DNA from: Octopus bimaculoides
Taxonomy: Eukaryota
Length of the DNA stretch: 58,880 nucleotides
Direction of reading: 5' to 3'
NCBI RefSeq assembly: GCF_001194135.2
Contig: NC_068990.1
Span: forward strand, 34,214,524-34,273,403
The notes under the pieces: generated by a model
Told to the model about the DNA's origin: nothing
Database searches by the model: none
Seen by the model: the letters and a program-made list of their open reading frames with translations, nothing else
Shown: piece by piece, positions 12,339-51,600 of the stretch
Layout of the letters: the number at the start of each line of letters is the position of its first letter
Numbering within the stretch: position 1 is the stretch's first letter
Position numbers and translations under genes: made by a program

Positions 12339-12942
12339 AACTATATTTATGCACACTCATAAATATATACACACGCACACACACATATATATACACAAAT
12401 GTTTACAAATTCAAATACATATGCATATATACATATACATATAAAAACACCTATTTCTATATACATACAAATCCATATATGCATATGAATATATATATAT
12501 ATATATATATGAAGATTCATATCAATACATATATACACACACACACACATATATATATATATGTTTGTGTGCATGTATGTATAAATGTGTGGATATATAT
12601 ATATATATATATATATATNNNNNNNNNNNNNNNNNNNNNNNNNNNNNNNNNNNNNNNNNNNNNNNNNNNNNNNNNNNNNNNNNNNNNNNNNTATACACAG
12701 ATATAGATATGAACATACATATCCATAGATATTCTTCTCTCATATTTACATTTATTGCAGCAGTCCTACAGTTTTTTCAAGCACGGTAAAAGAACTCAGA
12801 AGGTTGGGTCTCCAGCCAGGCTTTTGTGACACATTTAGACCCATAAATTCTTCAGCAATCACTTATATCTACATACACACACACACATATATATAAACAC
12901 ACACACATATATATAAACACATGCATATATGTATATACAAAC

Positions 12943-12999
<57 letters not shown>

Positions 13000-13239
13000 C
13001 ACACACACATATATATACATTCATACATATACTTATATATAGGTATATATATACATTTATACATATATAAACATATATTCATATATCTATATACATACAT
13101 GTATATATATATATATTTTCATATACGTATATATACATATAAACATGCACATATACAAATAAACACACACACACACACACACAAATACAGAAACATATAC
13201 ATAAATATATATGTTAATATATATATATATATATTTTTA

Positions 13240-13410
13240 CAACGGGTTTCTTTCAGATTCCATCTAACAAATTCACTCAAGAGGCTTTGGACAGGCCGAG
13301 GCTATAGCTTCAGACATTGGTCGAAGGTGTCATACAGTGGGACCAAACCCACAAGCATAGGGTTGTTAAGCAAGCAACTTACCACACAACCGCTTCTGCA
13401 CCTTCATATG
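13240..13410 (-). mobile_element. SINE family A 5' portion, reverse orientation
   Basis: ttctttcagattccatc...ggctatagc...cagtgggaccaaacc...cttaccacacaacc. Confidence 0.8.
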
Positions 13411-13739
13411 TACACATATATATAGACATATACACACATACATATACACACATATATACTCATGTACACACAGATATATATACTCATGTGCACACATGTA
13501 TTCTATATACATATAGAGATATGTGTATACATACATATCTATTATTCTTTCCTTCTTTCTATCATCCCCTTCACACTTCGTTCTTCCGTTCCCCCTCTCT
13601 CATATTTCCTGGTCTTATCTTCACGCTCACCTTCCCTCCTCTTTCACTTCTCTCTGTCCTTTTTATTTTTTTCTCACCCCGCTCCTTCATGGTTCTATCC
13701 CTCTGCCTCTACCTCTCACGCTTCTCTCCCCAAGTGACC

Positions 13740-19442: not shown

Positions 19443-20512
19443 ATATGTATGTATACACACACACAAACACATACATACCTTTTCCTATTATGTATATTTT
19501 TATGCATGTACATAAGCATATGTCCGTCTGCAAATTTATGTTTATAGATTTGAATGTGTGTGTGTGTGTTCGTGTGTGTGAATATGTATACCTCTATGTT
19601 TACATGTATGGAGATATCTGTATGTATATACAAACTTATATACAGAATTATATACACACGTCTACACACACCCTTTTTTGTTACCCTAGTTGTCGTACGT
19701 GTAGAACAGAAAACGTGTTTTCATGTATTCCGTAGACATAATTATTCCACATTCTTATTGCCTTCTAATATCTCCGTTTTCGTGCTCAATATACGTGTAC
19801 CAGTGATATATTCGATACTTGTTTGATAATAGCGGTGAAATAATAATATTTCTGCCCTGATGAAGAACTGTATCTGTAATATACTGAGTCGATATAAGTG
19901 ATGTACCAGTAACATAATGTGTTGTTATAAAGATATGCCAGGAACAATCAATAACATATTGGATTTATAGAGATGTACCAGTAATAACGAGTAATTTATT
20001 GCGTTGTTGTAGAGATGCACCGGTAATATACAATAGTTGGTGTAGAGATGTACCAGTTTTATATCGAATTGCTGTAGAGATATAATATACCAGTGATACG
20101 TTTGGTTGGTTTTGGTGTTGAGTAATATATAATGAGCTTCGCTGACTGCGCTTCCAGGCACAAAAACCACCGGGCCAAATCTTTCGGTCCTTTTCACTCC
20201 GAGTTCAAAGTGAACAGAGCGCGACTTTGATTTTTCCATTCTTGTGTGGAGAAAAGTATTAAATAGGTACCAGTCATGCACTGTGAGTCGATCTCATCTA
20301 GTGTTCTCTCCACCCCCTCCTATCCCCGACACCAGATGATTATATCACTGGTGCTTCTTGTCACATTTGTGGGAAATTGTATAATAAAAGTTCTTAACTC
20401 CGAAGCCCCTCCTTCTTTATCTTTTCCTCTCTCCGCTTTAATTTGAGGATGGATTTTCGGTTTTGATTTTTATTCGTTGGGCTTAGTTAGTTTAGTTGTC
20501 TGTGCACTACTA

Positions 20513-20551
20513 ATGGAATTGTCATTACTATATGATTATTATGAAAGTCAG
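20513..20551 (+). CDS. Candidate coding end of an alternative first exon of the ELAV gene (MELSLLYDYYESQ)
   Basis: ATG at 20513 runs 13 codons without a stop into a consensus donor CAG|GTGAGT (20551/20552). Phase 0 matches the acceptor at 26294, whose 21-nt leader (ITKGDTI) is open and in frame with ATG 26315. Confidence 0.5.
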
Positions 20552-20765
20552 GTGAGTGTATAGGATGAGAGTGGCGATGTGATGGCGGTGGAGGTGGTCG
20601 TCTTCATTATTATACAGGATAGATGCTGCAATAGCAGTCAGCCGCTCACTTTTTCAAAAGTGAAAAAGAAGCTAGTCTTGGATAGAAAGCGGCGGGAGAC
20701 GCTTTACTGAGACGCCGGCTCTTCTTCTCTCTCTATCTCTGTCTTTGTGTGTGTGTGTGTGTGTC

Positions 20766-20806
<41 letters not shown>

Positions 20807-21527
20807 TATTTATTCATTCTTTCTCTTTATACCGTTTCCTTCCTTTCTTTATGTGACACACGCCACTTCTTANNNNNNNNNNNNNNNNNNNNNNNNNNNN
20901 NNNNNNNNNNNNNNNNNNNNNNNNNNNNNNNNNNNNNNNNNNNNNNNNNNNNNNNNNNNNNNNNNNNNNNNNNNNNNNNNNNNNNNNNNNNNNNNNNNNN
21001 NNNNNNNNNNNNNNNNNNNNNNNNNNNNNNNNNNNNNNNNNNNNNNNNNNNNNNNNNNNNNNNNNNNNNNNNNNNNNNNNNNNNNNNNNNNNNNNNNNNN
21101 NNNNNNNNNNNNNNNNNNNNNNNNNNNNNNNNNNNNNNNNNNNNNNNNNNNNNNNNNNNNNNNNNNNNNNNNNNNNNNNNNNNNNNNNNNNNNNNNNNNN
21201 NNNNNNNNNNNNNNNNNNNNNNNNNNNNNNNNNNNNNNNNNNNNNNNNNNNNTACAACGCCATTTTCTTTGTACTCAGCAAAATATAATCAATAGTTTGC
21301 ACCACACACACAAAATATTTTGTATACGGAAACGCTAACGTCTCTTCCACGAGTTCATATTTTCGGACGTTACTCGTTACATTCTGGAATCCTTAAAAAC
21401 CAGTAAGTTCAGGGTTTGTTTATTTGATTTTTTTTCTTTCTTTCTTTTTTCCTCTTGTCTTCAACTCGCGCATCAGAACGCGCGCGCGCACACATAGGTG
21501 TGTATATTTCAACATGGGTGTATGTGC

Positions 21528-21568
<41 letters not shown>

Positions 21569-21835
21569 ATGGGTGTATGTGTGTGCATATGTTAACATCG
21601 ATGTTTGTGTGTATTAATGCGTGAGTGTGTGTGTGTTTTAATATATATGTATATATATACACTTCATGTGTATGTATATATAAATATGTTATACATACAT
21701 ACATACATACACATATATAAACATTTTCTTGCTGGTGCGAGATTTTTCATTTTAATTTTCTCTCTCTTCTAATTTGAGTTGTTCTATGTTTACAAACGTT
21801 TTTTCTTTGTTTTTTCTTTTTCTTTTTTTTTGTAG

Positions 21836-22023
21836 GATAAAAATATTTGATTTCCATATTTGCCAAAACTAGCTTGGATTTTATTGTTTGTCTGAGCGAT
21901 CATGTTGTGGATTTCGTCACAGATTCCTTAGAAACACACACACATACACACACACTAACACACGCTCTCACATTATACATGTGTGTGTGTGTATTCACTA
22001 AGATTAGGCACGCGGATCTTTGA
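21836..22023 (+). other. Candidate 5'UTR exon
   Basis: ~35-nt T-rich tract ending tgtAG at 21834-21835; GA|GTAAGT donor at 22023/22024. Contains CA repeats, so less certain. Confidence 0.3.
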
Positions 22024-23680
22024 GTAAGTTGAAGTCATTATACGGGATACAGAATATTTCATAGCACAATACCAAATAGTCAAGAGTTGTCCGTATGTAG
22101 TTAGTACACATTCTTTTCCAATTCACTAATATACCGTATTTCATGACGGACTTACCTAAACTGTTGTTTATATGACTACATCACACACAGACACACACAC
22201 AAACTTATACATATATCTATATGTACGCACACACATAAATGCATATGCATGTATATACGCATAGAAACACACACATGCACTCGCTCGCGCGCGCGATTTT
22301 GCCTTGTAGGAATTATATCCTGTGGGGGTGGTGGTGGCTACGGTGATGTCGGGCACGGTCGAAACTTTGACGTAATTATCATCCGTAAAACGCTATACTG
22401 AATGTTCTCTCGGTCTCTCTTACAATGAGTTAAGCTACTCGAACCGCTTCATTGATTTTCCCCCCCCTTCATACACCACATAAAAGCTATTCATTTCAGA
22501 CAATAGTACGGACACCAGTTTTATTCACCTGCTGAAACGAGTCCCCCCCCCCTCCACTCTCCTTTTTTTTTTACCTATTTGTAAATAAACCTTGCTTTTA
22601 AAGCTCCTCTTTCTCCGACCCTTTTGTATTTGCCTGTGTGTCTGCTATATCTTCTACTTCTATTACATCTCTGTTTTCTTGTGTTGGGAACCTCACCTCC
22701 TGTGATGTCTGTTGCTATGGTTATGTATTCTTAATTGCCAATCAAAAAGGAAACCGATTTTCTAAACATCTCACCTATTTAGTAAGTTGCGCATTACTTG
22801 TGATGTGAACCAAGTTCCGTTGATAGTTTCACTGTAAGAAAGCTAACGAATATATTAAATGGACAACGGAACTGTTAATGTCTGCTATTTGTTTTCACTG
22901 TGCTTTTCATTAATTCTTTCTTTAGTTCCGATGCCATCTCTGCTATGCGATGTAAACATGTCAGTTCATTTTCCACACTTGAAACTTATATTGCTAGAAG
23001 CGGGTCGATTTCTATGGTTGTTGGTTTCAAAATGTGATAATGGATAATAAATATATGGCATTGCATCTGACGGGACGGTTCCTGCTCCAAAAAAAAAAAG
23101 CTGAACTGGAGGCTATAATCGTGTTACATATTCAGTTCGATCTTGGTCCAGTTCGTAACTAATTGATTCATCAGGTTGTCGCTTGGACAACCTGCTCACA
23201 TGCTCAAACATTTGTGAACCACGCGCTTTTACACAATGGTGTGCCTACCTAGCTTTGGTCAGTTTCATTATAAAAGTGAAAATTGTTCAACTCAGTCCAC
23301 TACTTCAATCAGCCATTCACTTTAGTTTTATCTGAAGATGTTTCCTCATTCATTTCACCATTCTTCCCCGCCTGACTAATTTTATTTATTGAAAGTAATT
23401 AAGCCAATGCCGTGTAGATATTGTATTGGTTTGGTTTCCAGTTGTTTAGCAGTAAATTGTCTGCTTTCCAGCTTGACCAATATAACCAGTAGACCTGCAT
23501 TATTACTTACTGTCTGCTTACATCTGTGACCGTTTTTAACCATGCTACTCCTCTGCGTTTGCCGTTCGCATCACTTACTGCTGCTAGATCTGTGATCTGT
23601 CTCTTGTTTTTTTTTTTTTTTTTAAATATATACATTTATATTTCTATTTTTCCCTATTTTGTTTTTCTTTTCACTTTTAG

Positions 23681-23824
23681 AATTAACTAGTGTCTATAAC
23701 TTGGCTAGAACTATTGACTCCTACGGCTGGGCACTATCATATTTTTGGTGTCGGCCACTTTTAACTACTGCATTTAAATCTGAGACCGGTTTCTTGTTAC
23801 AACCAACATACACAGCCGAACTAG
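23681..23824 (+). other. Candidate non-coding (5'UTR) internal exon, 144 nt
   Basis: Strong polypyrimidine tract 23641-23680 ending cacttttAG; donor TAG|GTAGGT at 23824/23825; no ATG inside. Confidence 0.45.
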
Positions 23825-23915
23825 GTAGGTAGGTTTATTTTATAATTTATTGCTTTTTTTAATTATTTTATTTTAGTTATTTAGAACAATAATTTTAACA
23901 TTTTCTTATTTTAAA

Positions 23916-23952
<37 letters not shown>

Positions 23953-24796
23953 TTGTTTTCTACATTCGTTAATGAAGTAATTACCATGGAATGTTAAATC
24001 ACCGTTAGAAATAAAGCCTTATTGCTTCTCTGGTGCAGATCTCGTCAACTGCCTGGATCACAGGTGGTAACAGCCTTCAGCCCTAACAAACCAACTCCGA
24101 CCTATCCTCATTATGCCAACCGGATCAATATCGTCACGACAAAACGCGCCCTCCCCCCATTTTCTATCCTACATCTTAAATCTAACTTCATTTTTCTTTC
24201 CGGTCAGTTTCATCATCACCATCATATTTATTGTTTTTTTTTGTTGTAATTTGTTTTAATGTCGCAACTTGACAGCTTTTTCACTATTACACTTTGTAAT
24301 CTAATCTATATCTTCAGTAGATACTAGCTCTAAGCTATGAGTGCTGATAAGGGGAAGTATTCTAGATGGAGAAATCTTTCCATTTTGGCCTGGCATTTAG
24401 TAATGATTCCTAAGAATTAGACACTTTTTTCAAGTCACAGCGTCAATTGGTTTTAGAAATAACCACATCGAGAAGATTTCGTGGTGCTTTTAATACATCT
24501 CCCAGTCGATCCCGGTCTGTTTTTTTCTTTTTCTCACAGTTCCATTTTAGCACCTTTTTTCAAAAACCTACTAGTTAATACATTCTATTGATTCCTTTAT
24601 TTACACAATAAAAGATAAAAAACAAGAACAAAATCGACTATCTCTATTCTAACTTGCTTGGTGTTTCCTAGAACATTTATTGTTAAATGTCATTTGGTAA
24701 GGGCTAATTCTAACCCCTTATAAATAACTTTTACTATATATATATATAGTGGCTATATATTTAGTGGCTAGACTGGCAATATGACCATCCCCAAGT

Positions 24797-24844
<48 letters not shown>

Positions 24845-25332
24845 AATTTCTTTAAAACATGATTATATTTATTCTTACATTAAATAAGTGCTAGACTGTT
24901 TGGGTACCTGTCTGATAGGCTGCCTCCTTACTTCGGTTTATCCTCCCAATTTCTCATTAGGTGAGGAAGCCAGCATTCGCTGCCTGCTCATATTCTTCTG
25001 AAATCTGCCAAGCATGTCTGCATATATTTTGTTAGTTGGGCGATGCTAACAGTCGGTGATACAGCAGAAGTGCGCTTCACTAGTAGAAAGATGTGTGAGT
25101 AGTACTAGTAGTTGCAGTGTGTATCTTCTTGACTGCACCTCCACTGTGGCCTTCATCTTCTCTCAGCAGCAGCGGCACCGTAAGATTCAGTGACCAGAAA
25201 CCCGTCTTGTATATAATAAACCGTTGCAGTAGTAGTAGTTGTTGCAGAGATAGCAGCATTAACTGCCGCCGCTCCTTGTTACTGCTACTACTTCGATTAC
25301 TGCTACTACAACTAGTAGTTGCATTATAATTG

Positions 25333-25358
25333 GTAGTAGTAGTAGTAGTAGTAGTAGT
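25333..25358 (+). repeat. (GTA)8 trinucleotide repeat within a GTA/CTA/CTG-rich stretch (25080-25630)
   Basis: Directly read from the sequence. Confidence 0.9.
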
Positions 25359-26194
25359 CTTTCCAATATCGATGATAGGAGAGTGGCGGCTGCCGGTCGG
25401 CCAGTGTAAGGGCGGAGGGAGAGTGATGGGTACAACTTGATAATGATGCACGTTCTCATTGGCTCACACTGAGTTTCTTTAGAACAGTTTTCCTCCCTTC
25501 GATGCATTCTCGTGAGGTATTTATTGAGGTCATTGCTACTGTTGTCATTCATTCAATTATTGATTCCTGTCGTCTTCTTCGTCATCGTCGACCTCTTGCT
25601 GCTGCTGCTGCTACTATTACTACTACTGCTGGGGAGAACTGTACTTAGTCGCCGTTCGTTGCCTTAAAATTGCAGCCGTAGATTTACCACGGGATAAATT
25701 TTACCAAATGCAGGTTGGTTCTACATTTGTAAGGGTTGGCATTGTAAATTGTTATACGAGATTGTTGTTCAGGTGTTTTTTTTTCCTTCTTCTTCTTTGT
25801 CTTTTTTTATTCAGGTGAATGTTGATCTGCTTGAGCAGACGAGAGGCTTAAACATTGAACAAAGAATCTCTTCTTCTTCATTGCTTAACTTGCTTTTTCA
25901 GTTGGATTCAACACACATACACACCTGCATATTAAAGTAAAGCATTCTTTGCGTGGTTTCGTTTTTCCCCTAATTCTTGTTTATTAAACCTTTCACAACC
26001 ATCGCATTATTCAACTATATTCCCTGCACTCTAAAACTGTTCCTTATTGTTTATCCTCTTGGAGCTGTCTAATTAAATGTTGAATTTCTGGCTTTTGCAT
26101 TAGATATCTAAAGAGTGAACTTACAGCTAGGAAAGATTCCTCAAAATGTCTTCTTGCTCTCTCGTTTCTCTGTGTATCGGTGTTTCTCTTTTAA

Positions 26195-26560
<366 letters not shown>

Positions 26561-27079
26561 TAGTATAAGCCACGCTGAACAATACTACAGATGGCTTGAA
26601 GTCGATTATTCTCTTTAGCCAAATTTCGTTTCAATTTTGGGTTTCTGTGATGCTTTCCACTCAGTAATTCGGTTTCAATTTCTTCTTTGTTAAAGAAAAT
26701 GCTTTCTCTCTCATCTCACCGCTATTATCTCTCTTCAGTGTCTTTCTGTGTTTCGTATCTGCTCCTCTGTCTCCCTCACAAGTATATCCTAGTTGTGTTT
26801 TCAATTGATAGCATTGGTGTCTATCAAGTGATTATTTTTGTTTGTTGTAGTAACCATTCTTCATTTGCTAAATATTCTGTTCAGAAATGATGCTAAGTAA
26901 TGTTTAATTGATGACAGGTGGCTATGTTTAGCTGACTGACTGTTTTAGCCTCAGGCTTGACCAATTTCCTCTAACAGCCTTCATCACGCCACATACAGTA
27001 ACTTGATTTTCTGCTATCAATCTGCTAGCATTCAGCTACATGGTTTTACTGTAGACCACACTGCAAACAGCACTGGATA

Positions 27080-30000
27080 TTTCTTTGCTCCCACTCTCTC
27101 TCTCTCTCTCTCTCTCTCCCTCATTACATTCAATTCTTGTTTGCACTCTCGTTATATTCTCTCTCTCTCTCCCCTTCTTCCCTCCCACGTCACATCATTT
27201 CCTCTCTATCTCTTCTATAGTCTCTGAATCATTATTCTCTCATCATTCACACACCCTCTCTTATCGTTATTCTGTCGCTCTTTCTTGTGCTTTCCCATTT
27301 TCATTTTCTCTTAACTGCCATTTTCATCCTGTCTTATTTTCTAATTCTCTCTCTCTCTTTTTCTCTCTCTCTCTCTCTTAATTTTTCTCTCTCCCACCCT
27401 TATCTTCATTTCATTTGTCTCTCTAATCTTTATTCTCTCTATCTTAAATGCCATTTCAAATATTAATTATCTCCTAATTATTCTTCTTTTTGGCATATTT
27501 ATTCATTTTCTCCCTCCCACTTTCATTTTCTTTCTTTTGCATCATCAGTCTTTTTCTTTATTCTTTTTTCTCTCTCTCTCCCATCATTATTCTTTGTCTT
27601 TACTATTTTCTCATCCTCTCACCAATCTCTCATTTTTACGATATTCCTTTGCTTTTAGTATCACTTTCACTTCATTCTGTCACTTTCATCTCTACTTTCG
27701 TTTTCTCCCTTTCATCCTCACATTTTCAATCTTCACTCTTATCTCCACTTTCACTTTCGTTTCCACTCTGCTCAAATTTTCTTTCTGTCTATCTTCTTCA
27801 TTCTCCACTACATCCATTCTCTCTCTCATTTTTAATATCTCCATTTTTGTATGTAATATTCTTTAAATGTTTCCATTCTCTTCTTGAATTCCTGCATTCT
27901 CTCTCACATTCTCTCTCTCTCTCTTTCTCTTTCTTCATTCTCTCCTATCCTCATTCACCCATTCTCATTCCATTCTCTCTCTACCTTCATCATCACCTCC
28001 TCTGTATTTCACTTCAATTTTCTCACTTCTCCCTCTACATTCTTCCACTCCTTTCCACCATTGCTTCTCTCATCTTTATTCACTCTTGCTTTCATTCACT
28101 CTCTCTCACCCCCCCCTCCTAAATCTCAGGCATTTACACTGTATCCCCACTTTAATTTTCCATTTCCTATCTTCCCTTCAGTCTCTCACTAAATTTTCCT
28201 AGTTTCATTCTCTCTCCCTATATGCCTTAACTTCATTCTCTCTCTCTCTCTTCTTTCCCTTTTCTATGCCATCGTTGACTCTTTAATCATCATTCTCTCT
28301 CTCTCTTCTTTCCCTTTTCTATGCCATCTTTGACTCTTTAATCATCATTCTCTCTCTCTCTTCACCTCATCCTCATTCACTCTCCCTCACATCTTCATAC
28401 TTCCACTCTTTCTCTCATTCATTACTCCTCTCCTTTCTGTTCTGCATTTAATGTTTCCCCACTCTTGCATTTTTCTTTTTGTCTTTTAATTTTCTGTCTC
28501 CTAGCTCTCATTCAACATTTCCTATGTCCCTCCCATTTTCTCTCCCTCCCATTTTCAACGATGTGGTTTCTCATCGTTATTCTCACACTAACTCATTTTC
28601 TCCCTTTTTTTGCTGTTCGATTCACATTCTCTCTCCCCTCCCGTTCTTCATTCTTTTTGCTGCTTTTTTCTCTCCCCATTTTCATGCTTTTCCATCTCTG
28701 TATTCAGTCTCTCCCCACCTGATCATCTCCAGCTTTCCCTGTTATTCTCTCTCTCACTCTCTCTCTCTCTCTCTCCAATCTTTGTTCTCCCTCTTCCCTG
28801 TATTCTTTCATTCTCTCTATTTTCTTTCTTCTTTCATTCTCTCTATTTTCCATCTGCTTTCATTCTCTCTCTTTCCTATCTTCATTCTCTCTCTTTCCTA
28901 TCTTCATTCTCTCTCTTCCTTGTCTTCAGTCATTCTCTCTCTTTCCTGTCTTCATTCATTCTCTCTCTTTCCTGTCTTCATTCATTCTCTCTCTTTCCTG
29001 TCTTCATTCATTCTCTCTCTTTCCTGTCTTCATTCATTCTCTCTCTTTCCTGTCTTCATTCATTCTCTCTCTTTCCTGTCTTCATTCATTCTCTCTCTTT
29101 CCTGTCTTCATTCATTCTCTCTCTTTCCTGTCTTCATTCATTCTCTCTCTTTCCTATCTTCATTCTCTCTCTTCCTTGTCTTCATTTATTCTCTCTTTCC
29201 CGTGTCTTCATTTATTCTCTCTTTCCTGTCTTCCTTCATTCTCCCTCTTCCCTGGTCTTCATTCATTCTCCCTCTTCCCTGGTTTTCATTCATTCTCTCT
29301 TTCCCCTGTCTTCATTCATTCTATCTTTCCTGTCTTCATTCATTCTCTCTCTTCCCTGTCTTCATTCTCTCTCTTCCCTGTCTTCATTCATCCTTCCTCT
29401 TCCCTGGTCTTCATTCATTCTTCCTCTTCCCTGGTCTTCATTCATTCTTCCTCTTCCCTGGTCTTCATTCATTCTTCCTCTTCCCTGGTCTTCATTCATT
29501 CTTCCTCTTCCCTGGTTTTCATTCATTCTCTCTATTTCCTGTCTTCATTCATTCTCTCTATTTCCTGTCTTCATTCATTCTCTCTGTTTCCTGTCTTCAT
29601 TCGTTCTCTCTCTTTCCTCTGTCTTCATTCGTTCTCTCTCTTTTNNNNNNNNNNNNCCTGTCTTCATTCATCCTTCCTCTTCCCTGGTCTTCATTCATTC
29701 TTCCTCTTCCCTGGTCTTCATTCATTCTTCCTCTTCCCTGGTCTTCATTCATTCTTCCTCTTCCCTGGTTTTCATTCATTCTCTCTATTTCCTGTCTTCA
29801 TTCATTCTCTCTATTTCCTGTCTTCATTCATTCTCTCTGTTTCCTGTCTTCATTCGTTCTCTCTCTTTCCTCTGTCTTCATTCGTTCTCTCTCTTTTCTC
29901 TGTCTTCATTCGTTCTCTCTCTTTCCTCTGTCTTCATTCGTTCTCTCTCTTTCCTCTGTCTTCATTCATTCTCTCTCTTTCCTCTGTCTTCATTCATTCT

Positions 30001-31620
30001 CTCTCTTTCCTGTCTTCATTCATTCTCTCTCTTTCCTGTCTTCATTCATTCTCTCTCTTTCCTGTCTTCATTCATTTTCTCTCCTTCCTGTCTTCCTTCA
30101 TTCTCTCTTTCCAGTCTTCATTCATTCTCTCTATTTTCTGTCGTCTTTCATTCTCTCTCTTCCCTGTCTTCATTCATTCTCTCTCTTCCCTGTCTTCATT
30201 CATTCTCTCTCTTCCCTGTCTTCATTCATTCTCCCTCTTCCCTGTCTTCATTCATTCTCCCTCTTCCCTGTCTTCATTCATTCTCCCTCTTTCTCATCTT
30301 CATTCATTCATTCTCCCTCTTCTCTTTCTTCATTCATTCATTCTTTCCCTATCTTCTATCTTCCCCTTGTCTTCTCCCCTATTTTCATGCTCTCTTTCTC
30401 CCGTCTTCCTTCTCTTTTTCTCCCTTCTTCATTCCCTCTCTTTCTCTCCTGCGTTCATGCTCTCTCTCTCTTTCTCCCCTGTCTCCATCCTCTCTCTCTT
30501 TCTTGTCTTCATGCTCTCTCCTCCTCTCTCTCTCTCTTTCTCTCCTGCCTTCATGCTCTCTCTCCCTCTTCCCTATCCTCATTCATTCATTTTTTCTCTG
30601 CCCTATTCTCATTCATTCATTCATTCTCTTTCTCCCCTATCCTCATTCATTCATTCTTTCTCTGCCCTATTCTCATTCATTCATTCTATTTTTCCCCTAT
30701 CCTCATTCATTCTTTCTCTGCCCTATTCTCATTCATTCATTCATTCTCTTCCCCCATATCCTCATTCATTCATTCTCTCTCCCCTGTCTTCATTCATTCT
30801 CTCTCCCCTGTCTTCATTCATTCTCTCTCTCCCCTGTCTTCATTCATTCTCTCTCTCCCCTGTCTTCATTCATTCTCTCTTTCCCCTGTCTTCATTCATT
30901 CTTTCTTTCCCCTGTCTTCATTCATTCTCTCTTTCCTATCTTCATTCTCTCTCTTCCCTATCTTCATTCATTCTCTCTTTCCTATATTCATTCTCTCTCT
31001 TCCCAGTCTTCATTCATTCTCTCTCTTCCCAGTCTTCATTCATTCTCTCTCTCCCCTGTCTTCATTCATCCTCTCTCTCTCCCTCCCTCTCATTCTTTTC
31101 CTGGTTACTTTTCACTCCATTCTCTCATGATCTCTTCATTTCTTATTTTTTTCCTTTCTTTTCTCTCTGCCTTATTCTTCACTCTCCCATCCTCAGGATA
31201 TCTTTTCTCTTTCTTGTCATTTTGTTTTCTTTTTTTCTCTTCTTTCTCTGTTTACTCATCCTTCTGTTATATTTATCTTCCATTTTCACTGCTTTTCTCT
31301 TTTCAGATTTCTTCCCCTCACTAGTTACAATTCCGTATCTTATTTCCAGTCTCTCTTTCTCTCTCTCTCTCTCTGCCTCTCTTGTATTCATCCTTTCACT
31401 CTGTTCTTCATTCTATCTTACTTTCTCTATGCCTTACTCTTAATGGCAGATTTCTGAGTATTTCACCGATTTCTCATTTGCAACTTCTTTGTCCCAGTTA
31501 TTTTCCACTCCTTGTTGTTGCCTATTTCACCAAAGGTGATTCTGTTTCTCATTCTGATCGTTTCCCTCACCATACACCATTTTCTCTCTCTCTCTCTCTC
31601 TCTTTGCTATACGTAGATAT
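27080..31620 (+). repeat. ~4.5 kb pyrimidine-rich low-complexity tract on the sense strand
   Basis: Almost no G and little A on the + strand; includes a ~57-bp tandem duplication at ~28230-28360. Confidence 0.95.
28850..31080 (+). repeat. 26-bp minisatellite, consensus CCTGTCTTCATTCATTCTCTCTCTTT, with variant sub-arrays
   Basis: CCTGTCTTCA recurs at 28945, 28971 and 28997 (period 26). Variant blocks include ...TTCCTCTTCCCTGG... and ...CCCTATCCTCATT...; 12-N gap at 29645-29656. Confidence 0.95.
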
Positions 31621-32394
31621 TTATATATCATTTTTGTTTCTATGTTTACTTTTTCCCTTCTTGAGCAGGGTTAACAAAAAGTAATTCAGGCAGTGCATTA
31701 TGCCTGAACGCTCTTTCTGTTGCCAACACTTGTTTTCTATGAGAGAGCTTAGTATTCCATTAGTCTTTGCAGAATGTGAGACATTTTGATGAGAAGATTT
31801 AAAAACACTATGATGGCTTCTGCTTGTGTAGTGAACGAAAGGCATACTCAGAAAAGCACTAATATATGTATTATCAAAATTATTCAAGCATTCATTCGTT
31901 TTTTTTTTTTTCTGTTTCTGAATTTGAAGACTCCAAAAACAAAAAACAAAAAAAACAAAATTTGTGCCAATAAAACGATTTAATTCTAAAATACAGACTT
32001 CTTTTTTACAAAAGTAACATATATATACAAATAACTCACATACTCACACACTTATTCCAAAGCACTTTCTATACATACTTTTTGAGAATATCTCAAGGCA
32101 CACTCACAAAGCTATAAAGAATAGCATTTAAATATTGGGTTGAAAAATTCTATTTAGATGGAAAACGTTGAAGGTTGCTCATGGGACTTTGACTTTTTCC
32201 TCTATCCGAAAGGGGTTTTCAACATAGTATTTGTATAACTTTATGTGGGTGTTTGAAAATATTCCCCCAAAAAATTAGTTCACTTTCTCTCGAAAGGTTT
32301 TTATAAAATTCTTACGTCAACAATATATATGTCCATTTATATATCAGTATATATGGATAGATATGTATATGCGTGTGTGTGAGTATGTATGTAT

Positions 32395-32441
<47 letters not shown>

Positions 32442-34124
32442 TATATGTGCATGTGTATTTATGTGTATATATGTAAATTTGTATGCATGTAGTTATGTAT
32501 ATGTATGTGTGAGTATATATGGATATATCTATCAGTGAACATGCATATACATACACACATCTTCATAAATTTATATATACATATTTATCCAAAAGAAATA
32601 TGCATATATATGTATATAAAATATGTGTGTGTGTGTATATACATATATATATATATATATGTGTGTGTGTGTACGTCTGCATTTATATATAGATGTATAC
32701 AAATAAAATGTATTAACAGTATCATTTTGGAGACTGCAACTTGTGTTTCATCTTCCCTGAATGATATATAGTTGTGCTTAGTCCAAACTTTCCTCACTTT
32801 CACTTCCTATCTTCAGGTTATTCTGAGCTTGAAACATGTACGCTGCTAGCATAAGATTTTGTGAGAAAGAACGTTAACAGTAACAAAAAATACTTTGTTA
32901 CTGAACAGAGTTTTTTGACTGAATGAATTTTTTGTTTGGAAAGAGCATTAAGTTGGTTTCATGTAGAGATAGAGAGGTAACAGCTTCAACTAAGCAAGAC
33001 TATATATATTTCTCCATGCTTAGATCTGATGATGTCTCCAAGATCATGAGATACTATATATAAGATAATATAACTGCTAAGGAAACTATTTTAATATACT
33101 GATCCTATCAACAAGCAAACAAGCTAGACACATATATATTTATGCATATACAAGTATGCATATATGTGTATATAGTTAGCTATATTTGTATATATGCATA
33201 CACATATATATGTACATGAAGAAATGTATAGGTATACATATATGTACATGTGTATATGTCTGTATGTATAAGTGTGTGTGTGTATGTATAAGTGTGTGTG
33301 TATGTATACACACACGCATACATAAAAGTATCACTGCAACTGTCTGATAAATGGTCATGTGAAACACTGGGTAACAGCTTGTGAAGATTTTTTTTTCCAG
33401 CTTTAATGACTAGTAGACGTGTGTGTGTGTTCAGATATTTATGTCTTTTCTCATTCTGACAAAGATTAGGTAAGTAGATTATTGAGACATTGTTTTACAT
33501 CTAGATATCTGTCAGTAACCCTTACCTACTTTTGAAGTAAAGAATCACTTATTCTACATCTTGAAAGGTGCAGATGATTTTCTGACGGAGTAAAATTAAA
33601 ACAATGTAACCATATATAACTTAGGCAATTTTTGAATAAGCACAAAGAAACATAAGAAGAAACATGAATGCAATAGGGTGCATACAAACTAACTTGCATT
33701 TATGTGTGTGTGTTATAAGGAAGAGTGGGAGAGATGTATGCAGTGTGTAATGTAATATATATATATATATATATATATGCGCACACACACACAGACTTAG
33801 AGCAGGCTTTATTCAGTTTCTTTTGACTAATCTATGGTTAGCTTGTAGCTATATTAGAAAGCCCTTGTCCATGATGGAGATGTGTGACACTGAATCATAT
33901 GGTTGTGCAGCAAGTGTCTTAACCATACAGACATGCCTGCACCTAATGCGTGTGTGTGTGCATCTGCATGTTTGTATGTATATATATATGTGTGTCTGTA
34001 TATACATATATATATATGTGTGTGTGTGTGTACTCATGTGTATACATACACACATGTACAATAAATTTATACATGTGTATGTATATTTATATATGTGTAT
34101 GCGTATATATGTTTATGTGCGTAC

Positions 34125-34600
34125 ATTATACATCAGTTGGCCCTTCCTCTGTATATAGGACTTGTAACGAATGTCCTTGTGTACCACAGTTCTCTGATAG
34201 TCTGTTCCAGCTGAAGTTCTTTGATAATGGCCCGCATTGATTCTTCTGAGATCATCATCGATAATTTTCAAACCTGTTGAGTGAATTTCAGTACCCTTAT
34301 AGTTTCCCATCATTTAGGATTCTTTTTTTATTTTACATTTTTTTTTTTCTTTTTTTATACAATTGAAATATCCTCACCAGACGCTTCAGGTTCATTTCTG
34401 AACTTTGTGCTATCAAAGATCTTGCAACATTTACAAAAGTTGGCAATTTCAAAATTGCTGTGTTCCGCACTCATGGCAACAGAAGCTGCCTGTCTTTTCA
34501 ATTCTTGTATTAGTATTTTATCAACTGTGGAGTCTGAAAGAAATAAAAATCTTTTAATTGGTTTGAAGAGAGTAATACACTGGTAATTTAGTGTCTTCAA
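34125..34600 (-). mobile_element. Decayed Tc1/mariner (maT/Bmmar1-like) transposase N-terminus
   Basis: QELKRQAASVAMSAEHSNFEIANF... and KIIDDDLRR...VVHKDIRYKSYIQRKGQLM resemble DD37D-type HTH regions; the subfamily is recalled from memory. Confidence 0.7.
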
Positions 34601-34668
34601 ATACCCTTTGTGTTCTTTATGTATGTATCTATGAAATATTTATAGGAATGTATTTGTATATCTAGTTA

Positions 34669-34701
<33 letters not shown>

Positions 34702-36017
34702 GTGTGTATATATATATTTACATATATATAAGTAATGTCTTTTATACATATTGATATATCTGTATGTATATCTGAGTGTGTATGTTTCCTGTCTGTATAT
34801 GCATATATGCTTTTCTTCCGCTGTATATTTATCATCATCACTGTGCTTTCATTACTGATGTGTACGATGTGTCATTATGCTCCGAATCAGTTCACATATC
34901 ATCTGACTACTTCACTATTTGGATTAGCACTTACCATCTATGTCATGCATTTCGATTTTGGCTCAGTTTATCACCAACTTTTTTACAGATTGTATTTCGT
35001 GCATTTTATTCTCGCTTCGGCCTTTAGTAACAATGTTTTTGCCTTTGACAAACTAAAGAATCCTCTGCATGCTATGCTGTCGTCCATTGTTTGTCAACCA
35101 CTTAATGGGCAGTTTTCGTTTAGCTTTTCATGACACCCACAATATCGAAGATGCCTTGTGTCACTAATGGCTTGGGAGTCCACACTACTTTACGTAGTGT
35201 GCATTACAACATAGTAACCTGTTCAGAAGTTTGTATGAACTATAATAGTGGCAGAAGAATGAAATATGATGGGTTAAATTTGCAAGAATATGGGTGGTTA
35301 AAGAGTGCACCCAGTTGTTATATTGGTGAACATAGGTTGATGGTAAAGAGGTGTGGAAGTGATCAGTGATAAGCAGAAGTGGAGTTGGTGATGGTAGGAG
35401 TGGGTGATGGATGTGAATAGAAAGTGGCTCAAGGAAGAGGGAGTGATGGCTGGCAGTACAGAGCAGGGTGCACCGTTAAGTGTTTTGCCTACATTAATTA
35501 TACAGCCAAAAGTGAAAAAAAAAAAAGCAAGAAGGGAGTGTTGCTGCAGAGAAGATAGATGTTGAGTAGGAAAATGATGAAGAGATGAATGATTTGGGAT
35601 GAAAGTGTATTGCAGAGGTGGGGCTTGGCCAGTGCAGTCAACTGATATATCTAGTAAAGGACTGAAATACGTGCATCTGCCATCCCATCTCCATCTCCTT
35701 CATTTTCAATATCCATTACACCGTGCATTCAGGATGGTCACATCTACCGCATTGCATATTACTAGTCTTGTCTCGGCCTCCACATAGCTCAGCTTCATGT
35801 GATCAATCATCACTTCATTTTTGGGTTCACCTAGCTTTCTCTCTTCCACAGCTTCTTTCAGATATGGACCCTTTGCAATTCTTGGTCCAGCTGTCATCTT
35901 CCATATCCATCACTTATCTTTACAAGTAATCTTCTCTATTACCCTCAGTTCATTTGTACTTCATCACACGACACGTGTGTATATAAAATACATCTTAGTA
36001 TATTTATGTGTTTGTGA

Positions 36018-48674: not shown

Positions 48675-51600
48675 CAGCCTGCCAAGCATATATTTGCTCC
48701 ATATTCACCTACCATTCTTCTTGCCCTCCTCTACTATTACTCTGCCTTTCTCTTATTTTCTATCTTGTCATCATTCTAACCCCACTTACCCTTTACTAGG
48801 CATATTTATGAAACTGCATCAGATCACCCTACTCTCTCTACCCATTACACTCATCACTTCTACCTACTGTTTTACCAACCACCACCACCACACCCTTTCC
48901 TTTCTTGCACCCATCATCTACTCTTGCCTTTATCTCATCACCCAACCTCAGTTTCGTCCACCTCTTATTGCCAATCACTCTTTCCATTTCTTCTTCACTT
49001 TCTTTCCAACAACGCTCCAAATAGCCCTGCACTTTTCATTCTACCTTGCCATTCTAGTTCTTCTGATGTCATTGCTCTCTCTCCCATTCTTCACCTCAGC
49101 CACCTGAGCAAATACACACTCCTCCGACTATTGGATACTTTCTATTCTTACATTCTTATTCCTGCCTCAGCCACCTATTTCTGACCTTACTACTGGCATT
49201 GATTCCTCACTTATACCCATCTTTGTGATCTGCATGCTTCATGCTAGTGATTACTCTGTACATTTACTGTATACAAGGCACTCCCTCTCTGCTGGTGACA
49301 CAAAGGAAGCCTCATGCTTGCTGAGTTACAGTGGGAAATGGAATTTCACATGCTGTCTGATTATGCTCTTTGATCTTGATATCCTTGATATCCTTATCCT
49401 TCTAACACACCTATCACACCTATCACTTGCTACTTGATTACTCTCTCCTCTTCATATTTTCACTGAGTAATAGCCAGTGTGACTAAGGATAGTGATGCTC
49501 TCTTCAGTTCACTCTACAATGCTTCTAGTGTAACTAAGAGATGCCATGGGCTATACTGATTTTTCTCTCTCCAACACTTCACCTCTCCTTCACTTATCAC
49601 AGTGGCTCTCTTACCATCTTGATGTATACACATATGATTGCTTATCAAATCTGCATGTACCTCATACTATCAATATTGCCACCATGCCCATTTGGTACTG
49701 GCATCCATCACTCCCTCTGACTATTTATCTACCACTTGATATCAGTCATTCTCTAAATCTCTTATTCTTCAGCTATCATAATAAAATGTATCTAGTGCAC
49801 TTTGTAAAAGAGTTGGGGGTAGAGAGGGCATCTAGCCATGGAAATCAAGCCAAAAATAACACCCACAAGCTAGATGTGATACTCTAACCCATCTAGGATA
49901 CCATCAAAATGTTATCTAACCTGTGCCATCAGAGTTGTAAAATGGCATTATCTTTAATGTCTGTTCTTCGTGATAGTATGGGATAAACAATATGGTAGGA
50001 TCCAATGAGTTGAAGAACCATGTTATGCTCCAAAGTTTGTTTGGCATGGACAGATAGGACTAAATGCTTTTTTTTTTTTTTTGTTGTAGCACCAACATTT
50101 GTTAGATTGTCGTACAACTTGCAAGACTGGGGAGTTTATAGTTGGCTCCTTTAACTGAAGGAGAAAGTGTGATTATTTTAGGCAGGGTGATGAGAGGATC
50201 AGCTTTATACTTTTGGAGAGAATGGCAGTAATCACTTGTAAGGGAGGAATTCTCAAATAAATGGAAGAAAAGGGATTATTGTTGGTGATATGAATAACAC
50301 TCATCCTTATAATGTGACTATCCCAAGTTGTAAGGACAAGACGAGATGCAAGGTGTGGGGGAAGAGAAAATGAAAAGACAAAATAGATGAGTTGTTAGGA
50401 TTCAGAAAGTTATCAAAAGAGGTGTAAAAGTCATGGAGTATTGGCCATGTGCACGAAAGATGTGAGGTAACTGAGAAGTTATGGAGAGATCAATGAGAGA
50501 ATGAAGGCATAGGAATACGAGATGGTAGCAGACAAATGAGAAAGCATCATAGTTATGAGTAAAAGGATGATGGAAGTGAGTGGAGATATGGATGAGGAGA
50601 AGGTGGATTGATGAATTATGAATGATAAAGTGGTTATTAAAGTAAGTGGAGAGATGTATAAAGGAGGGAGTTTGGGCAAAAGTATAATGACAAGCATAAA
50701 CATGTGTGTACACAGATACACATGTACATCTATATGGAAATATTTATACACAAAGCACATGTGTATGCATGTGTACATCATGCAACTTATCCACAATGTG
50801 AAAATGCTGCCTACAATTTTTTCAGCCCACAGCAGAATAGAACTAAAAATATATAGTCTAAAACTAATTAAAGTTGTATACAGAACAGGAAGTACCCAAA
50901 TCCTATCCAACCTGAAATTCTACAAGGCTAACTAAAAATTGGTTCAAAAAAAGATTTTAAAGCAAAAGTATCCCAGAATTCTTTCTATGTAAGATACTAA
51001 GATGACAATTAAAGAATATATGTCACATGCATTAATATAAATCACATGTGTTAAATTTGTTCCTGAGAGAAACACTAATACATGTAAAAGCATATTCCAT
51101 GAGACAAGGGAGTCCTTGTGAGACAAAGAATAATGGTCTCATATTGCTTAAATAATTTAATGACAGCAAGAAATCCCACTTCAAAGAGACACTCTTTGAG
51201 ATAGAACTTAATCTCAGACTCACACATGAAAAAGTAAGGGAAGAAAAAGAAACCAGAACAGTTGAAAATATAAAAACTAACCCTAAAGTCTTCCACATAT
51301 TGTGTGTGTGACTGGTTTCCAGTCATGAGATTTGCTCAACCTGAGACTACTGTAAAAGATACTTAACCAGTTCCTGCACAGAACTACATGGCTGAGAAGC
51401 AACCTAAGTGACAACAAAGCCATGCATGTTTATTATATAAATACATGTATTATGTATATAAATTATGTGTATATGATATATTTATGGGACATTCCCTGGC
51501 CCAGTGTCATTCTAATTACACTGTTCTGCTGCTATAATTCAGTGTGATCAGGACTCCACACTTCAGGTTTTCTTTGCTACCACTTATTCTTTTTAGTAAG

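What the first reader, a model, noticed from the sequence alone, without database searches (positions are those of the whole stretch)
28850..31080. Intronic 26-bp minisatellite that reads as a very large Nova (YCAY) plus PTB (CU-rich) binding array in ELAV pre-mRNA
Seen: ~2.3 kb downstream of the RRM1 donor, on the sense strand, a ~2.2 kb array (roughly 80-90 units by length/26) with consensus CCUGUCUUCAUUCAUUCUCUCUCUUU. Most units contain two adjacent UCAU tetramers plus UCUU and CUCUCU. Established: Nova/Pasilla KH proteins bind clustered YCAY, and PTB/hnRNP I binds UCUU/CUCUCU; these are antagonistic regulators of neuronal splicing. Inference: the array could act as a high-valency RNA-binding-protein platform or condensate seed that couples ELAV splicing to Nova/PTB levels, with copy number acting as a tunable dose. 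It could equally be a neutral satellite.
Basis: partly seen in the sequence, partly recalled or inferred. Interest (0 to 1): 0.72.

Follow-up and report, generated by a model that had tools for sequence, protein, structure and literature searches.

The report
Fast-evolving intronic CT-rich minisatellite in octopus ELAV
A real tandem array of about 2 kb, built from 26-base pyrimidine-rich units, lies in the long first coding intron of an octopus ELAV-like gene; comparison with relatives shows a young, fast-changing, lineage-restricted minisatellite, and nothing indicates a conserved splicing-factor platform.

Summary
TRF finds one array at 28785-31084: period 26, 88.6 copies, on the + strand. 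It starts 2,266 nt downstream of the donor (26519|GT) of an exon that encodes the N-terminus and first half of RRM1 of an ELAV-like protein. It carries 154 YCAY and 473 overlapping PTB-type hexamers.

Three corrections apply.
- The 12-N gap is flanked by a 238-nt near-identical duplication that abuts both gap edges. Another gap in the window shows the same signature. About 250 bp (roughly 10 units) is therefore probably an assembly artefact.
- The array is the core of a 4.6-kb sense-strand pyrimidine domain (27085-31700).
- About 32% of the TCAT runs (27 of 84) hold only one TCAT.

Comparative evidence favours neutral turnover. O. sinensis has the array at the same place, but only about 0.8 kb of it. 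The extra 1.25 kb here consists of blocks of identical, species-specific variants. The complete orthologous intron of a more distant octopod (8.9 kb) and of a still more distant relative (2.1 kb) has no array and no CT domain. The adenines that define YCAY vary more than the average position. The array also lies far outside the 200-nt range of the Nova RNA map.

A role as a multivalent RNA-binding-protein platform is not excluded, but it rests only on motif content. Genome-wide distribution and read support could not be tested.

The parts
21285..21403 (+). Approximate 5'UTR exon of the ELAV-like gene, spliced to the coding exon
   Evidence: RNA-derived Logan contig L013 from a distant octopod: bases 1-112 match window 21285-21403 at 78%, and bases 109-338 match 26290-26519.
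26294..26519 (+). First coding exon of the ELAV-like gene: ATG at 26315, N-terminus plus RNP2 half of RRM1, donor 26519|GT
   Evidence: ORF and sequence. Pfam RRM_1 E=3e-8. 100% identical to O. sinensis ELAV-like protein 4. 205/205 nt identical to O. sinensis.
27085..31700 (+). Sense-strand pyrimidine-rich domain (77-90% C+T) that holds the array. O. sinensis has an orthologous 3.0-kb domain.
   Evidence: Composition. Flanks align to L001 11385-12756 and 13780-14408 at 74-85%.
28785..31084 (+). Compound minisatellite. Unit = (TCAT)1-4 plus a CT-rich spacer, modal length 26 bp, consensus CCTGTCTTCATTCATTCTCTCTCTTT.
   Evidence: TRF: period 26, 88.6 copies, score 2076. Pattern search: 41 hits, all on the + strand. 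Unit parsing.
28785..30296 (+). 5' part of the array: homogeneous blocks (8 identical units, GG variant, TCGT variant). It corresponds to only about 250 bp in O. sinensis, so it is a lineage-specific expansion.
   Evidence: Shared and unshared 16-mers between the two arrays. Variant counts.
30297..31084 (+). 3' part of the array, collinear with the O. sinensis array (L001 13030-13620) through shared variant blocks
   Evidence: Diagnostic 16-mers shared in the same order. BLAST 30078-33778 vs L001 12747-16518.
29645..29656 (.). Assembly gap (12 N)
   Evidence: N-run listing.
29407..29644 (+). Pre-gap copy of a 238-nt duplication. The post-gap copy is 29660-29897, with 1 mismatch. Probably an unmerged contig overlap.
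   Evidence: Local alignment. Both copies abut the gap edges, and a control gap at 53189-53329 shows the same signature.
31005..31032 (+). Two of four acceptor-like sites (long Y tract + CAG|) inside the array. The others are at 28928 and 30113. There is no evidence that any is used.
   Evidence: AG dinucleotide listing in the array.

Best explanation
This is a lineage-restricted, rapidly turning-over intronic minisatellite. Its unit combines a short (TCAT)n run with a (CT)-rich spacer, and the array forms the homogenised core of a 4.6-kb pyrimidine-rich low-complexity domain in the very long first coding intron (>32 kb) of an ELAV-like gene.

It most likely arose and changes length by replication slippage and unequal exchange. 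It is transcribed passively as part of the pre-mRNA and removed with the intron. It persists in the sense orientation because pyrimidine-rich, AG-poor sequence is tolerated in introns. Any binding of PTB-like or Nova-like proteins would be incidental, not a selected function.

Shown here: the array's structure, position, strand and motif content; its orthologue in O. sinensis; the lineage-specific expansion; its absence from more distant relatives; and the duplication at the gap.

Inferred: the mutational mechanism and the lack of function.
For: Structure
- Unit lengths vary in steps that fit slippage of the 4-nt and 2-nt sub-repeats: 22, 26 and 30 bp, with 1-4 TCAT per run.
- Variants occur as adjacent blocks of identical units: 8 perfect units, then 5 and 4 copies of the GG variant on either side of the gap, and 4-7 copies of the TCGT variant. 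This is the signature of recent local duplication.
- The margins of the domain are degenerate and the centre is homogeneous. The share of consensus 8-mers is 0.03-0.17 in the flanks and 0.4-0.77 in the core.

Comparison with relatives
- O. sinensis has the array at the orthologous place, about 0.8 kb and 30 units. Its 3' part is collinear with 30297-31084 here, whereas 28785-30296 (1.5 kb) corresponds to about 250 bp there.
- The complete orthologous intron in L002 (8.9 kb, exon 93% identical) and in L011 (2.1 kb) has no tandem array and no pyrimidine-rich bin.

No sign of constraint on the motif
- Non-consensus fraction is 0.19 and 0.17 at the two YCAY adenines, against 0.118 overall.
- The array region is the least conserved part of the orthologous alignment: 75-81% identity, against 84-90% in the flanking intron and 100% in the exon.

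No specific signal from orientation or known elements
- Sense-strand pyrimidine bias is gene-wide: 9 Y tracts and 0 R tracts outside the domain.
- No Rfam family, no recursive splice site and no terminal inverted repeats.
Against: - The array and the CT domain have persisted at the same place in two species whose introns differ by 10-19%, so the array is not ephemeral.
- Motif density is as high as in RNAs that are proven multivalent PTBP1 platforms, and the RNA is predicted to be fully unstructured, so the motifs would be accessible.
- The TCATTCAT core as a whole is slightly less variable than the spacer (8.8% against 13.1% non-consensus).
- Absence of function cannot be shown from sequence. 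No expression, binding or population data were available.
Confidence: 0.75

Rival explanations
1. Multivalent RNA-binding-protein platform. The transcribed array binds many copies of PTB-like and/or Nova/Pasilla-like proteins. It thereby either tunes splicing or processing of the ELAV pre-mRNA, or locally sequesters these proteins, in the manner of PNCTR or the Xist E-repeat.
For: - 473 overlapping and 150 non-overlapping YUCUYY/YYUCUY motifs and 154 YCAY lie in 2.3 kb; the 4.6-kb domain holds 826 and 276.
- The density of about 207/kb equals that of PNCTR (PMC6224606).
- CU-rich tandem repeats of similar unit size form a proven PTBP1/MATR3/CELF1 platform in Xist (bioRxiv 10.1101/2020.03.09.979369).
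- The predicted RNA has no secondary structure.
- The array is on the sense strand of a neuronal RNA-binding-protein gene and is present in two Octopus species.
Against: - The array is intronic, so the RNA is presumably short-lived, unlike the stable lncRNAs that serve as precedents.
- It lies 2,266 nt from the nearest splice site and more than 27 kb from the next exon, while the Nova map applies within 200 nt.
- Length differs 2.5-fold between congeners, and the array is absent from the complete orthologous intron of more distant relatives.
- The YCAY-defining adenines are more variable than average, and YCAY-destroying variants have been amplified.
- Any CT-rich repeat would score the same on these motifs.
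- No paper in the library connects YCAY with cephalopods.
Confidence: 0.1
2. DNA-level regulatory VNTR. The polypurine/polypyrimidine array with embedded (TCAT)n acts in chromatin as an intronic transcription-modulating element, for example by binding GA/CT-repeat or TCAT-binding factors, by excluding nucleosomes, or by forming non-B DNA. This would resemble the TH01 (TCAT)n repeat in intron 1 of human tyrosine hydroxylase.
For: - The array is in the first coding intron, 7.4 kb from the 5'UTR exon.
- The TCAT motif is the same as in TH01, which modulates transcription in vitro (as reviewed in PMC7425049).
- Strand asymmetry is strong over 4.6 kb: GC skew about -0.75 and 77-90% pyrimidine.
Against: - Only 8 of 84 TCAT runs have 3 or more tetramers.
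- The G and A interruptions in every unit argue against long triplex-forming mirror repeats.
- The same lack of conservation applies as for the RNA model.
- No chromatin or reporter data exist.
Confidence: 0.06
3. A local copy of a dispersed repeat family, i.e. the internal tandem repeat of a transposable element or a genome-wide satellite. In that case its presence in ELAV would be coincidental.
For: Cephalopod genomes are repeat-rich (general knowledge). The intron has grown from 8.9 kb or less to more than 32 kb in the Octopus lineage, so much of it is inserted material.
Against: - There is no second copy of the unit or of the CT-domain flanks, on either strand, in the other ~54 kb of the window or ~40 kb of O. 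sinensis sequence.
- No terminal inverted repeats bound the domain.
- A search of 5.8 billion predicted proteins with the array's translation found no matching open reading frame. This is weak evidence, because short-read assemblies collapse such arrays.
- A scan of metagenome contigs gave only two single chance matches.
Confidence: 0.08
4. The array as a whole is an assembly artefact.
For: The scaffold is short-read style with 12 gaps in the window. About 250 bp next to the internal gap is duplicated. Runs of 8 identical units (208 bp) cannot be counted reliably from short reads.
Against: An independent assembly of another species (O. sinensis GCA_006345805.1) has an array of the same unit at the orthologous position, with collinear variant blocks. 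Only the length is in doubt, not the existence.
Confidence: 0.02

Closest known systems
Intronic minisatellites / VNTRs of animal genes (general class), including compound micro/minisatellites that evolve by slippage and unequal exchange
   Same: Head-to-tail units of 22-30 bp. Blocks of identical variants, a homogenised core with degenerate edges, and a large copy-number difference between close species. Lineage-restricted.
   Different: Nothing essential. It is unusually long and sits inside a 4.6-kb strand-asymmetric pyrimidine domain.
PNCTR, a short-tandem-repeat-enriched lncRNA that sequesters PTBP1 (Yap et al. 2018, PMC6224606)
   Same: Very high density of YUCUYY/YYUCUY motifs: about 207/kb here, against 2,178 in >10 kb there.
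   Different: PNCTR is a stable pol I transcript with shown PTBP1 binding, a nuclear body and a splicing effect. Here the sequence is an intron segment with no expression or binding data, and it is not conserved beyond the genus.
Xist E-repeat (CU/G-rich tandem repeats; platform for PTBP1, MATR3, CELF1 and TDP-43; bioRxiv 10.1101/2020.03.09.979369)
   Same: A tandem array of about 1.5-2 kb made of short pyrimidine-rich units, which could offer multivalent sites.
   Different: The E-repeat is exonic in a stable lncRNA, has G/U tracts for CELF1 and TDP-43, and is functionally validated. The octopus unit has almost no G and instead carries UCAU.
Nova-dependent YCAY clusters (Nova RNA map; Jelen et al. 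2007, PMC2014790)
   Same: Clustered YCAY tetramers in neuronal pre-mRNA, commonly spaced 4 and 22 nt apart.
   Different: Functional clusters lie within 200 nt of regulated splice sites and are conserved. This array is 2,266 nt from the donor, its YCAY adenines are among its more variable positions, and no alternative exon is known next to it.
TH01 (TCAT)n microsatellite in intron 1 of human tyrosine hydroxylase (as reviewed in PMC7425049)
   Same: [quoted passage not shown] TH01 is reported to modulate transcription in vitro.
   Different: TH01 is a pure tetranucleotide repeat of 3-11 copies. Here TCAT occurs mostly once or twice per 26-bp unit.

Membership tests
Minisatellite / VNTR | Head-to-tail array of units of roughly 10-100 bp | tested here: met
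   TRF: period 26, 88.6 copies, score 2076. Unit lengths 22-30 bp.
Minisatellite / VNTR | Copy number changes quickly between relatives or individuals | tested here: met
   About 2.05-2.3 kb here against about 0.8 kb in O. sinensis at the orthologous site; the expansion maps to the 5' half. Within-species polymorphism is not testable because no reads were available.
Nova-type YCAY cluster splicing element | Cluster of YCAY tetramers | tested here: met
   154 YCAY in 2.3 kb, 67/kb against 15-21/kb background.
Nova-type YCAY cluster splicing element | Position within about 200 nt of a regulated splice site | tested here: not met
   The array starts 2,266 nt after the donor at 26519, and the next ELAV exon is beyond the window, more than 27 kb away. 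Criterion from PMC2014790.
Nova-type YCAY cluster splicing element | Evolutionary conservation of the YCAY motifs | tested here: not met
   The YCAY adenines are non-consensus in 19% and 17% of units against a 12% mean. The array is absent from the complete orthologous intron in L002 and L011.
Nova-type YCAY cluster splicing element | Binding by Nova/Pasilla and Nova-dependent exon choice | not testable with these tools
   No CLIP or RNA-seq access.
Multivalent PTBP1 platform RNA (PNCTR, Xist E-repeat) | High density of YUCUYY/YYUCUY or CU tracts | tested here: met
   473 overlapping and 150 non-overlapping motifs, 207/kb, against PNCTR figures.
Multivalent PTBP1 platform RNA (PNCTR, Xist E-repeat) | Accumulating, stable RNA that holds the repeat | not testable with these tools
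   The repeat is intronic. No expression data were available.
Multivalent PTBP1 platform RNA (PNCTR, Xist E-repeat) | Demonstrated PTB binding and a downstream effect | not testable with these tools
   Needs EMSA, CLIP or deletion experiments.
TH01-like (TCAT)n regulatory microsatellite | Uninterrupted run of several TCAT tetramers | tested here: not met
   TCAT run lengths: 27 runs of 1, 49 of 2, 6 of 3 and 2 of 4.
Recursive splice site of long introns | Pyrimidine tract followed by AG|GTRAG | tested here: not met
   No such site anywhere downstream of the donor in the window.
Known structured RNA family (Rfam) | Match at gathering score | tested here: not met
   0 matches in 20000-36000. Array RNA has MFE 0 kcal/mol.

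The most novel reading that the evidence does not exclude
In the Octopus lineage, the greatly expanded ELAV intron has acquired a 2-4.6 kb unstructured CU/UCAU array. While it is being transcribed in neurons, the array would act as a high-capacity local sink for PTB-like and Nova/Pasilla-like proteins. That would couple the processing of the transcript of a master neuronal RNA-binding protein to the levels of two other splicing regulators, with array length as an evolvable dose. It would be an intronic, invertebrate counterpart of PNCTR or the Xist E-repeat.
Probability: 0.07. Interest if true: 0.6.

Novelty: new member of a known kind. Interest (0 to 1): 0.2.

Why it matters
As found, it matters little biologically: it is an ordinary, fast-evolving intronic minisatellite. 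It has practical value as a warning. Motif counts in tandem repeats are not evidence of function, and this short-read assembly inflates repeats at its gaps.

If the platform reading were true, it would be the first intronic, lineage-specific multivalent RNA-binding-protein array described in a cephalopod neuronal regulator, and it could be tested with CLIP and minigenes. The 2.5-fold length difference between congeners also makes the locus a candidate polymorphic marker.

Tried and rejected
- Genome-wide distribution, approached through the translated array. All three + frames are open. A 104-aa periodic peptide was searched against 5.8 billion predicted proteins and gave no hit. This is uninformative, because annotated eukaryotic proteomes omit such ORFs and short-read contigs collapse the repeat.
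- Scan of metagenome contigs with a 22-mer of the unit: two single, non-tandem chance matches.
- Recursive splice sites: none.
- Terminal inverted repeats around the CT domain: none convincing.
- Rfam: nothing.
- A complementary purine-rich partner on the same strand, which could make dsRNA for editing: none. There is no minus-strand unit match and no purine-rich bin.
- Literature on YCAY in cephalopods, on octopus satellites, and on the run accessions of the relatives' contigs: nothing useful. The species of L002, L003-L010, L011 and L013 therefore remain unnamed.
- A global alignment of the two species' arrays gave an arbitrary register. It was replaced by diagnostic shared 16-mers.
Full report
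**Observation**

Tandem Repeats Finder reports one dominant array in the window: 28785-31084, period 26, 88.6 copies, 80% matches, score 2076. The sequence itself shows this plainly.

All matches are on the + strand inside 28797-31080. No match occurred in 100 shuffles, and no match on either strand was found elsewhere in the 58.9-kb window.

Parsing the array as TCAT runs plus spacers gives 84 runs: 49 with two TCAT, 27 with one, 6 with three and 2 with four. Unit lengths are 26 (35 units), 27 (10), 28 (9), 22 (8) and 30 (6). 'Most units have two adjacent UCAU' is therefore true for about two thirds.

Motif counts in the array are 154 YCAY (67/kb, against 15-21/kb in the rest of the window), 152 TCTT and 106 CTCTCT. 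There are 473 overlapping and 150 non-overlapping YUCUYY/YYUCUY hexamers.

**The gap (tested first, as asked)**

The 12 N at 29645-29656 lie inside the array. The 238 nt that end exactly at the left gap edge (29407-29644) equal the 238 nt that start 3 nt after the right edge (29660-29897), with one mismatch. Average identity between units is only about 80%. Anchored at the first post-gap base, the two flanks differ by one 26-27-bp unit. A copy-number disagreement of this kind is the sort of thing that stops an assembler from merging overlapping contig ends.

As a control I aligned the flanks of all 12 gaps in the window. Gap 53189-53329 has a perfect 163-nt duplication that also abuts both edges; the other gaps have none. 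So this assembly leaves unmerged overlaps at gaps.

About 253 positions (241 bp plus the Ns, roughly 10 units) of the array are probably spurious. That gives about 2.05 kb and about 79 units. Runs of eight identical units (208 bp) also cannot be counted from short reads, so the true length is uncertain in both directions. Reads could not be consulted. Reading frame is irrelevant in an intron, and the unit register is continuous across the gap.

**Gene context**

A + strand exon runs 26294-26519. It has acceptor tcag|, ATG at 26315 and donor ACAG|gtaag, and it encodes MDSQ...[40 protein letters not shown](G).
- It hits Pfam RRM_1 positions 1-36 at E=3e-8.
- It is 100% identical to O. sinensis 'ELAV-like protein 4' and 70-95% identical to ELAV/Hu proteins of other animals.
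- An RNA-derived Logan contig from a distant octopod (L013) joins a 5'UTR exon (window about 21285-21403) to this exon, which confirms the direction of transcription.

The next ELAV exon (GQSLGYGFVNY...) is not in the window, nor in 32.6 kb of O. sinensis sequence downstream. It is present 8.9 kb downstream in contig L002 and 2.1 kb downstream in L011.

So the array lies on the sense strand of the first coding intron, 2,266 nt from the donor, in an intron longer than 32 kb.

**Surroundings**

The array is the core of a 4.6-kb domain (27085-31700) that is 77-90% pyrimidine on the sense strand. The share of consensus 8-mers is 0.4-0.77 in the core and 0.03-0.17 in the flanks, so the centre is homogenised and the margins are degenerate.

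Sense orientation is not special. In the transcribed part of the window outside this domain there are nine pyrimidine tracts of 20 nt or more and no purine tract. L002 shows 11 against 0.

Other checks:
- The array has only four AG dinucleotides, each forming an acceptor-like Yn-CAG| site. Nothing shows that they are used.
- There is no recursive splice site, no flanking inverted repeat and no Rfam match.
- The RNA is predicted to be completely unstructured (MFE 0).

**Relatives**

The window is collinear with O. sinensis chromosome CM016867.1 (locus L001). Identity is 81-90% in non-coding DNA and 205/205 in the exon's coding part. The source is therefore a congener, not O. sinensis itself.

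O. sinensis has the same pyrimidine domain (L001 11300-14300, 3.0 kb). At the orthologous position it has an array of about 30 units (about 12800-13620) with the same CTTCATTCATTC core.

Diagnostic variant 16-mers occur in the same order in both species: CTTTCTTCATTCATTCATTC, CCCTATCCTCATTCATTCA, CTCTCCCCTGTCTTCATTC and TATCTTCATTCATTCT. They link window 30297-31084 to L001 13030-13620. By contrast, window 28785-30296 (1.5 kb) corresponds to only about 250 bp in O. sinensis. That part is built of blocks of identical units, including variants that O. sinensis lacks (CCTGGTCTTCATTCATTCTTCCTCTTC and TCATTCGTTC).

This is a lineage-specific expansion by local duplication (or a contraction in O. 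sinensis).

Two more distant lineages carry the same exon: L002 with 93% DNA identity and L003-L010 with 92%. A further one is L011, with 74%.
- L002's complete 8.9-kb intron has no tandem array and no pyrimidine-rich bin.
- L011's complete 2.1-kb intron likewise has none.
- L003-L010 cover only 1.4 kb of the intron and show none.

The array is thus restricted to the Octopus lineage in which this intron expanded.

**Constraint on the motifs**

A wrap-around alignment of the array to its consensus gives 11.8% non-consensus cells overall. The figure is 8.8% for the 8-nt CATTCATT core (consensus positions 9-16) and 13.1% for the spacer. The two adenines that define YCAY are non-consensus in 19% and 17% of units.

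A variant that destroys the second YCAY (TCGT) has itself been amplified several-fold. The array region is the least conserved part of the orthologous alignment: 75-81%, against 84-90% for the flanking intron. None of this indicates purifying selection on protein-binding motifs.

**Mechanism**

The best-supported account is a compound minisatellite that arose from (TCAT)n/(CT)n slippage products in a pyrimidine-rich, low-complexity stretch of a growing intron. It is homogenised and resized by unequal exchange, transcribed passively and spliced out. It is tolerated in the sense orientation because it is AG-poor and resembles a polypyrimidine tract. I put this at 0.75.

The structure, position, turnover and phylogenetic restriction are shown. 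The mutational mechanism and the lack of function are inferred.

Its premise about motif content is right, and there are real precedents.
- PNCTR carries 2,178 YUCUYY/YYUCUY motifs in more than 10 kb and sequesters PTBP1 (PMC6224606). The density here is the same.
- The Xist E-repeat is a CU/G-rich tandem array that serves as a multivalent platform for PTBP1, MATR3, CELF1 and TDP-43 (bioRxiv 10.1101/2020.03.09.979369).

However, those are stable, validated RNAs, whereas this is intron sequence. Nova's position rules apply within 200 nt of splice sites (PMC2014790), and the array is 2.3 kb away. The comparative data show turnover, not conservation. I give the platform reading about 0.1. Its strongest form, given in the section on the most novel reading, gets 0.07.

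A DNA-level regulatory VNTR, like TH01 (TCAT)n in intron 1 of tyrosine hydroxylase (PMC7425049), is possible but unsupported (0.06).

A dispersed repeat family could not be tested genome-wide. Nothing in about 97 kb of surrounding sequence from the two species suggests it. The protein-space and metagenome scans were empty or showed only chance matches.

**Verdict**

This is a new member of a known kind, an intronic minisatellite. Interest is low (0.2).

The decisive work is long reads for true length and polymorphism, a whole-genome strand-aware scan for the unit, total RNA-seq across the intron, and PTB/Nova CLIP with minigenes.

Noticed in passing
window 53026-53188 and 53330-53492 (flanking gap 53189-53329): A perfect 163-nt duplication abuts both edges of a 141-N gap. 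This is the same unmerged-overlap signature as at the array gap, so sequence next to gaps in this assembly should be treated as possibly duplicated.
   Followed up: partly
window 26315-26519 vs L001 10604-10808: The coding part of the ELAV exon is 205/205 nt identical to O. sinensis, including all synonymous sites, while the flanking introns are only 81-90% identical. This suggests constraint beyond the protein sequence, for example RNA structure, editing or splicing signals.
   Followed up: no
window 25438-25627: A non-coding element about 670-860 nt upstream of the coding exon is 82-86% identical to distant octopod contigs (L002 9133-9267, L003 2704-2882). Their other non-coding DNA does not align to the window. 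It may be a conserved intronic regulatory element or an alternative 5' exon.
   Followed up: no
window 26520 to the end; L002 10206-19098; L011 2612-4688: The orthologous intron is 2.1 kb in L011 and 8.9 kb in L002, but more than 32 kb in this species and in O. sinensis. This is a large lineage-specific intron expansion in a neuronal regulator gene.
   Followed up: partly
L001 33264-33386; window 50789-50912; L013 339-394: The O. sinensis 105-aa 'ELAV-like protein 4' model splices this exon to a non-RRM terminal exon. The window counterpart of that exon is frame-broken. An RNA contig from another octopod (L013) also joins the exon to unrelated sequence. The long intron may host cryptic terminal exons that give truncated transcripts, or these may be annotation or assembly noise.
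   Followed up: partly
window 21285-58880, + strand: Outside the CT domain, the transcribed region has 9 pyrimidine tracts of 20 nt or more and no purine tract. Upstream of the 5'UTR exon the counts are 0 and 2. L002 shows 11 and 0. This is a marked sense-strand pyrimidine bias in the introns of this gene.
   Followed up: partly
L002 10890-11040 and L003 4437-4583: The two distant octopod contigs share an intronic block of about 150 nt (75% identity) about 700 nt downstream of the donor. It has no counterpart in the window or in O. sinensis.
   Followed up: no
window 28239-28363: A 55-bp unit is repeated 2.3 times at 98% identity inside the left part of the CT domain. This is another very recent local duplication.
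   Followed up: no
window ~1936 and ~39672, + strand: Two similar translated fragments (…LCGKKLASQLHGSRFSP… and …LCGKTFASQPYGTRFSP…) suggest two copies of a dispersed element in the window.
   Followed up: no
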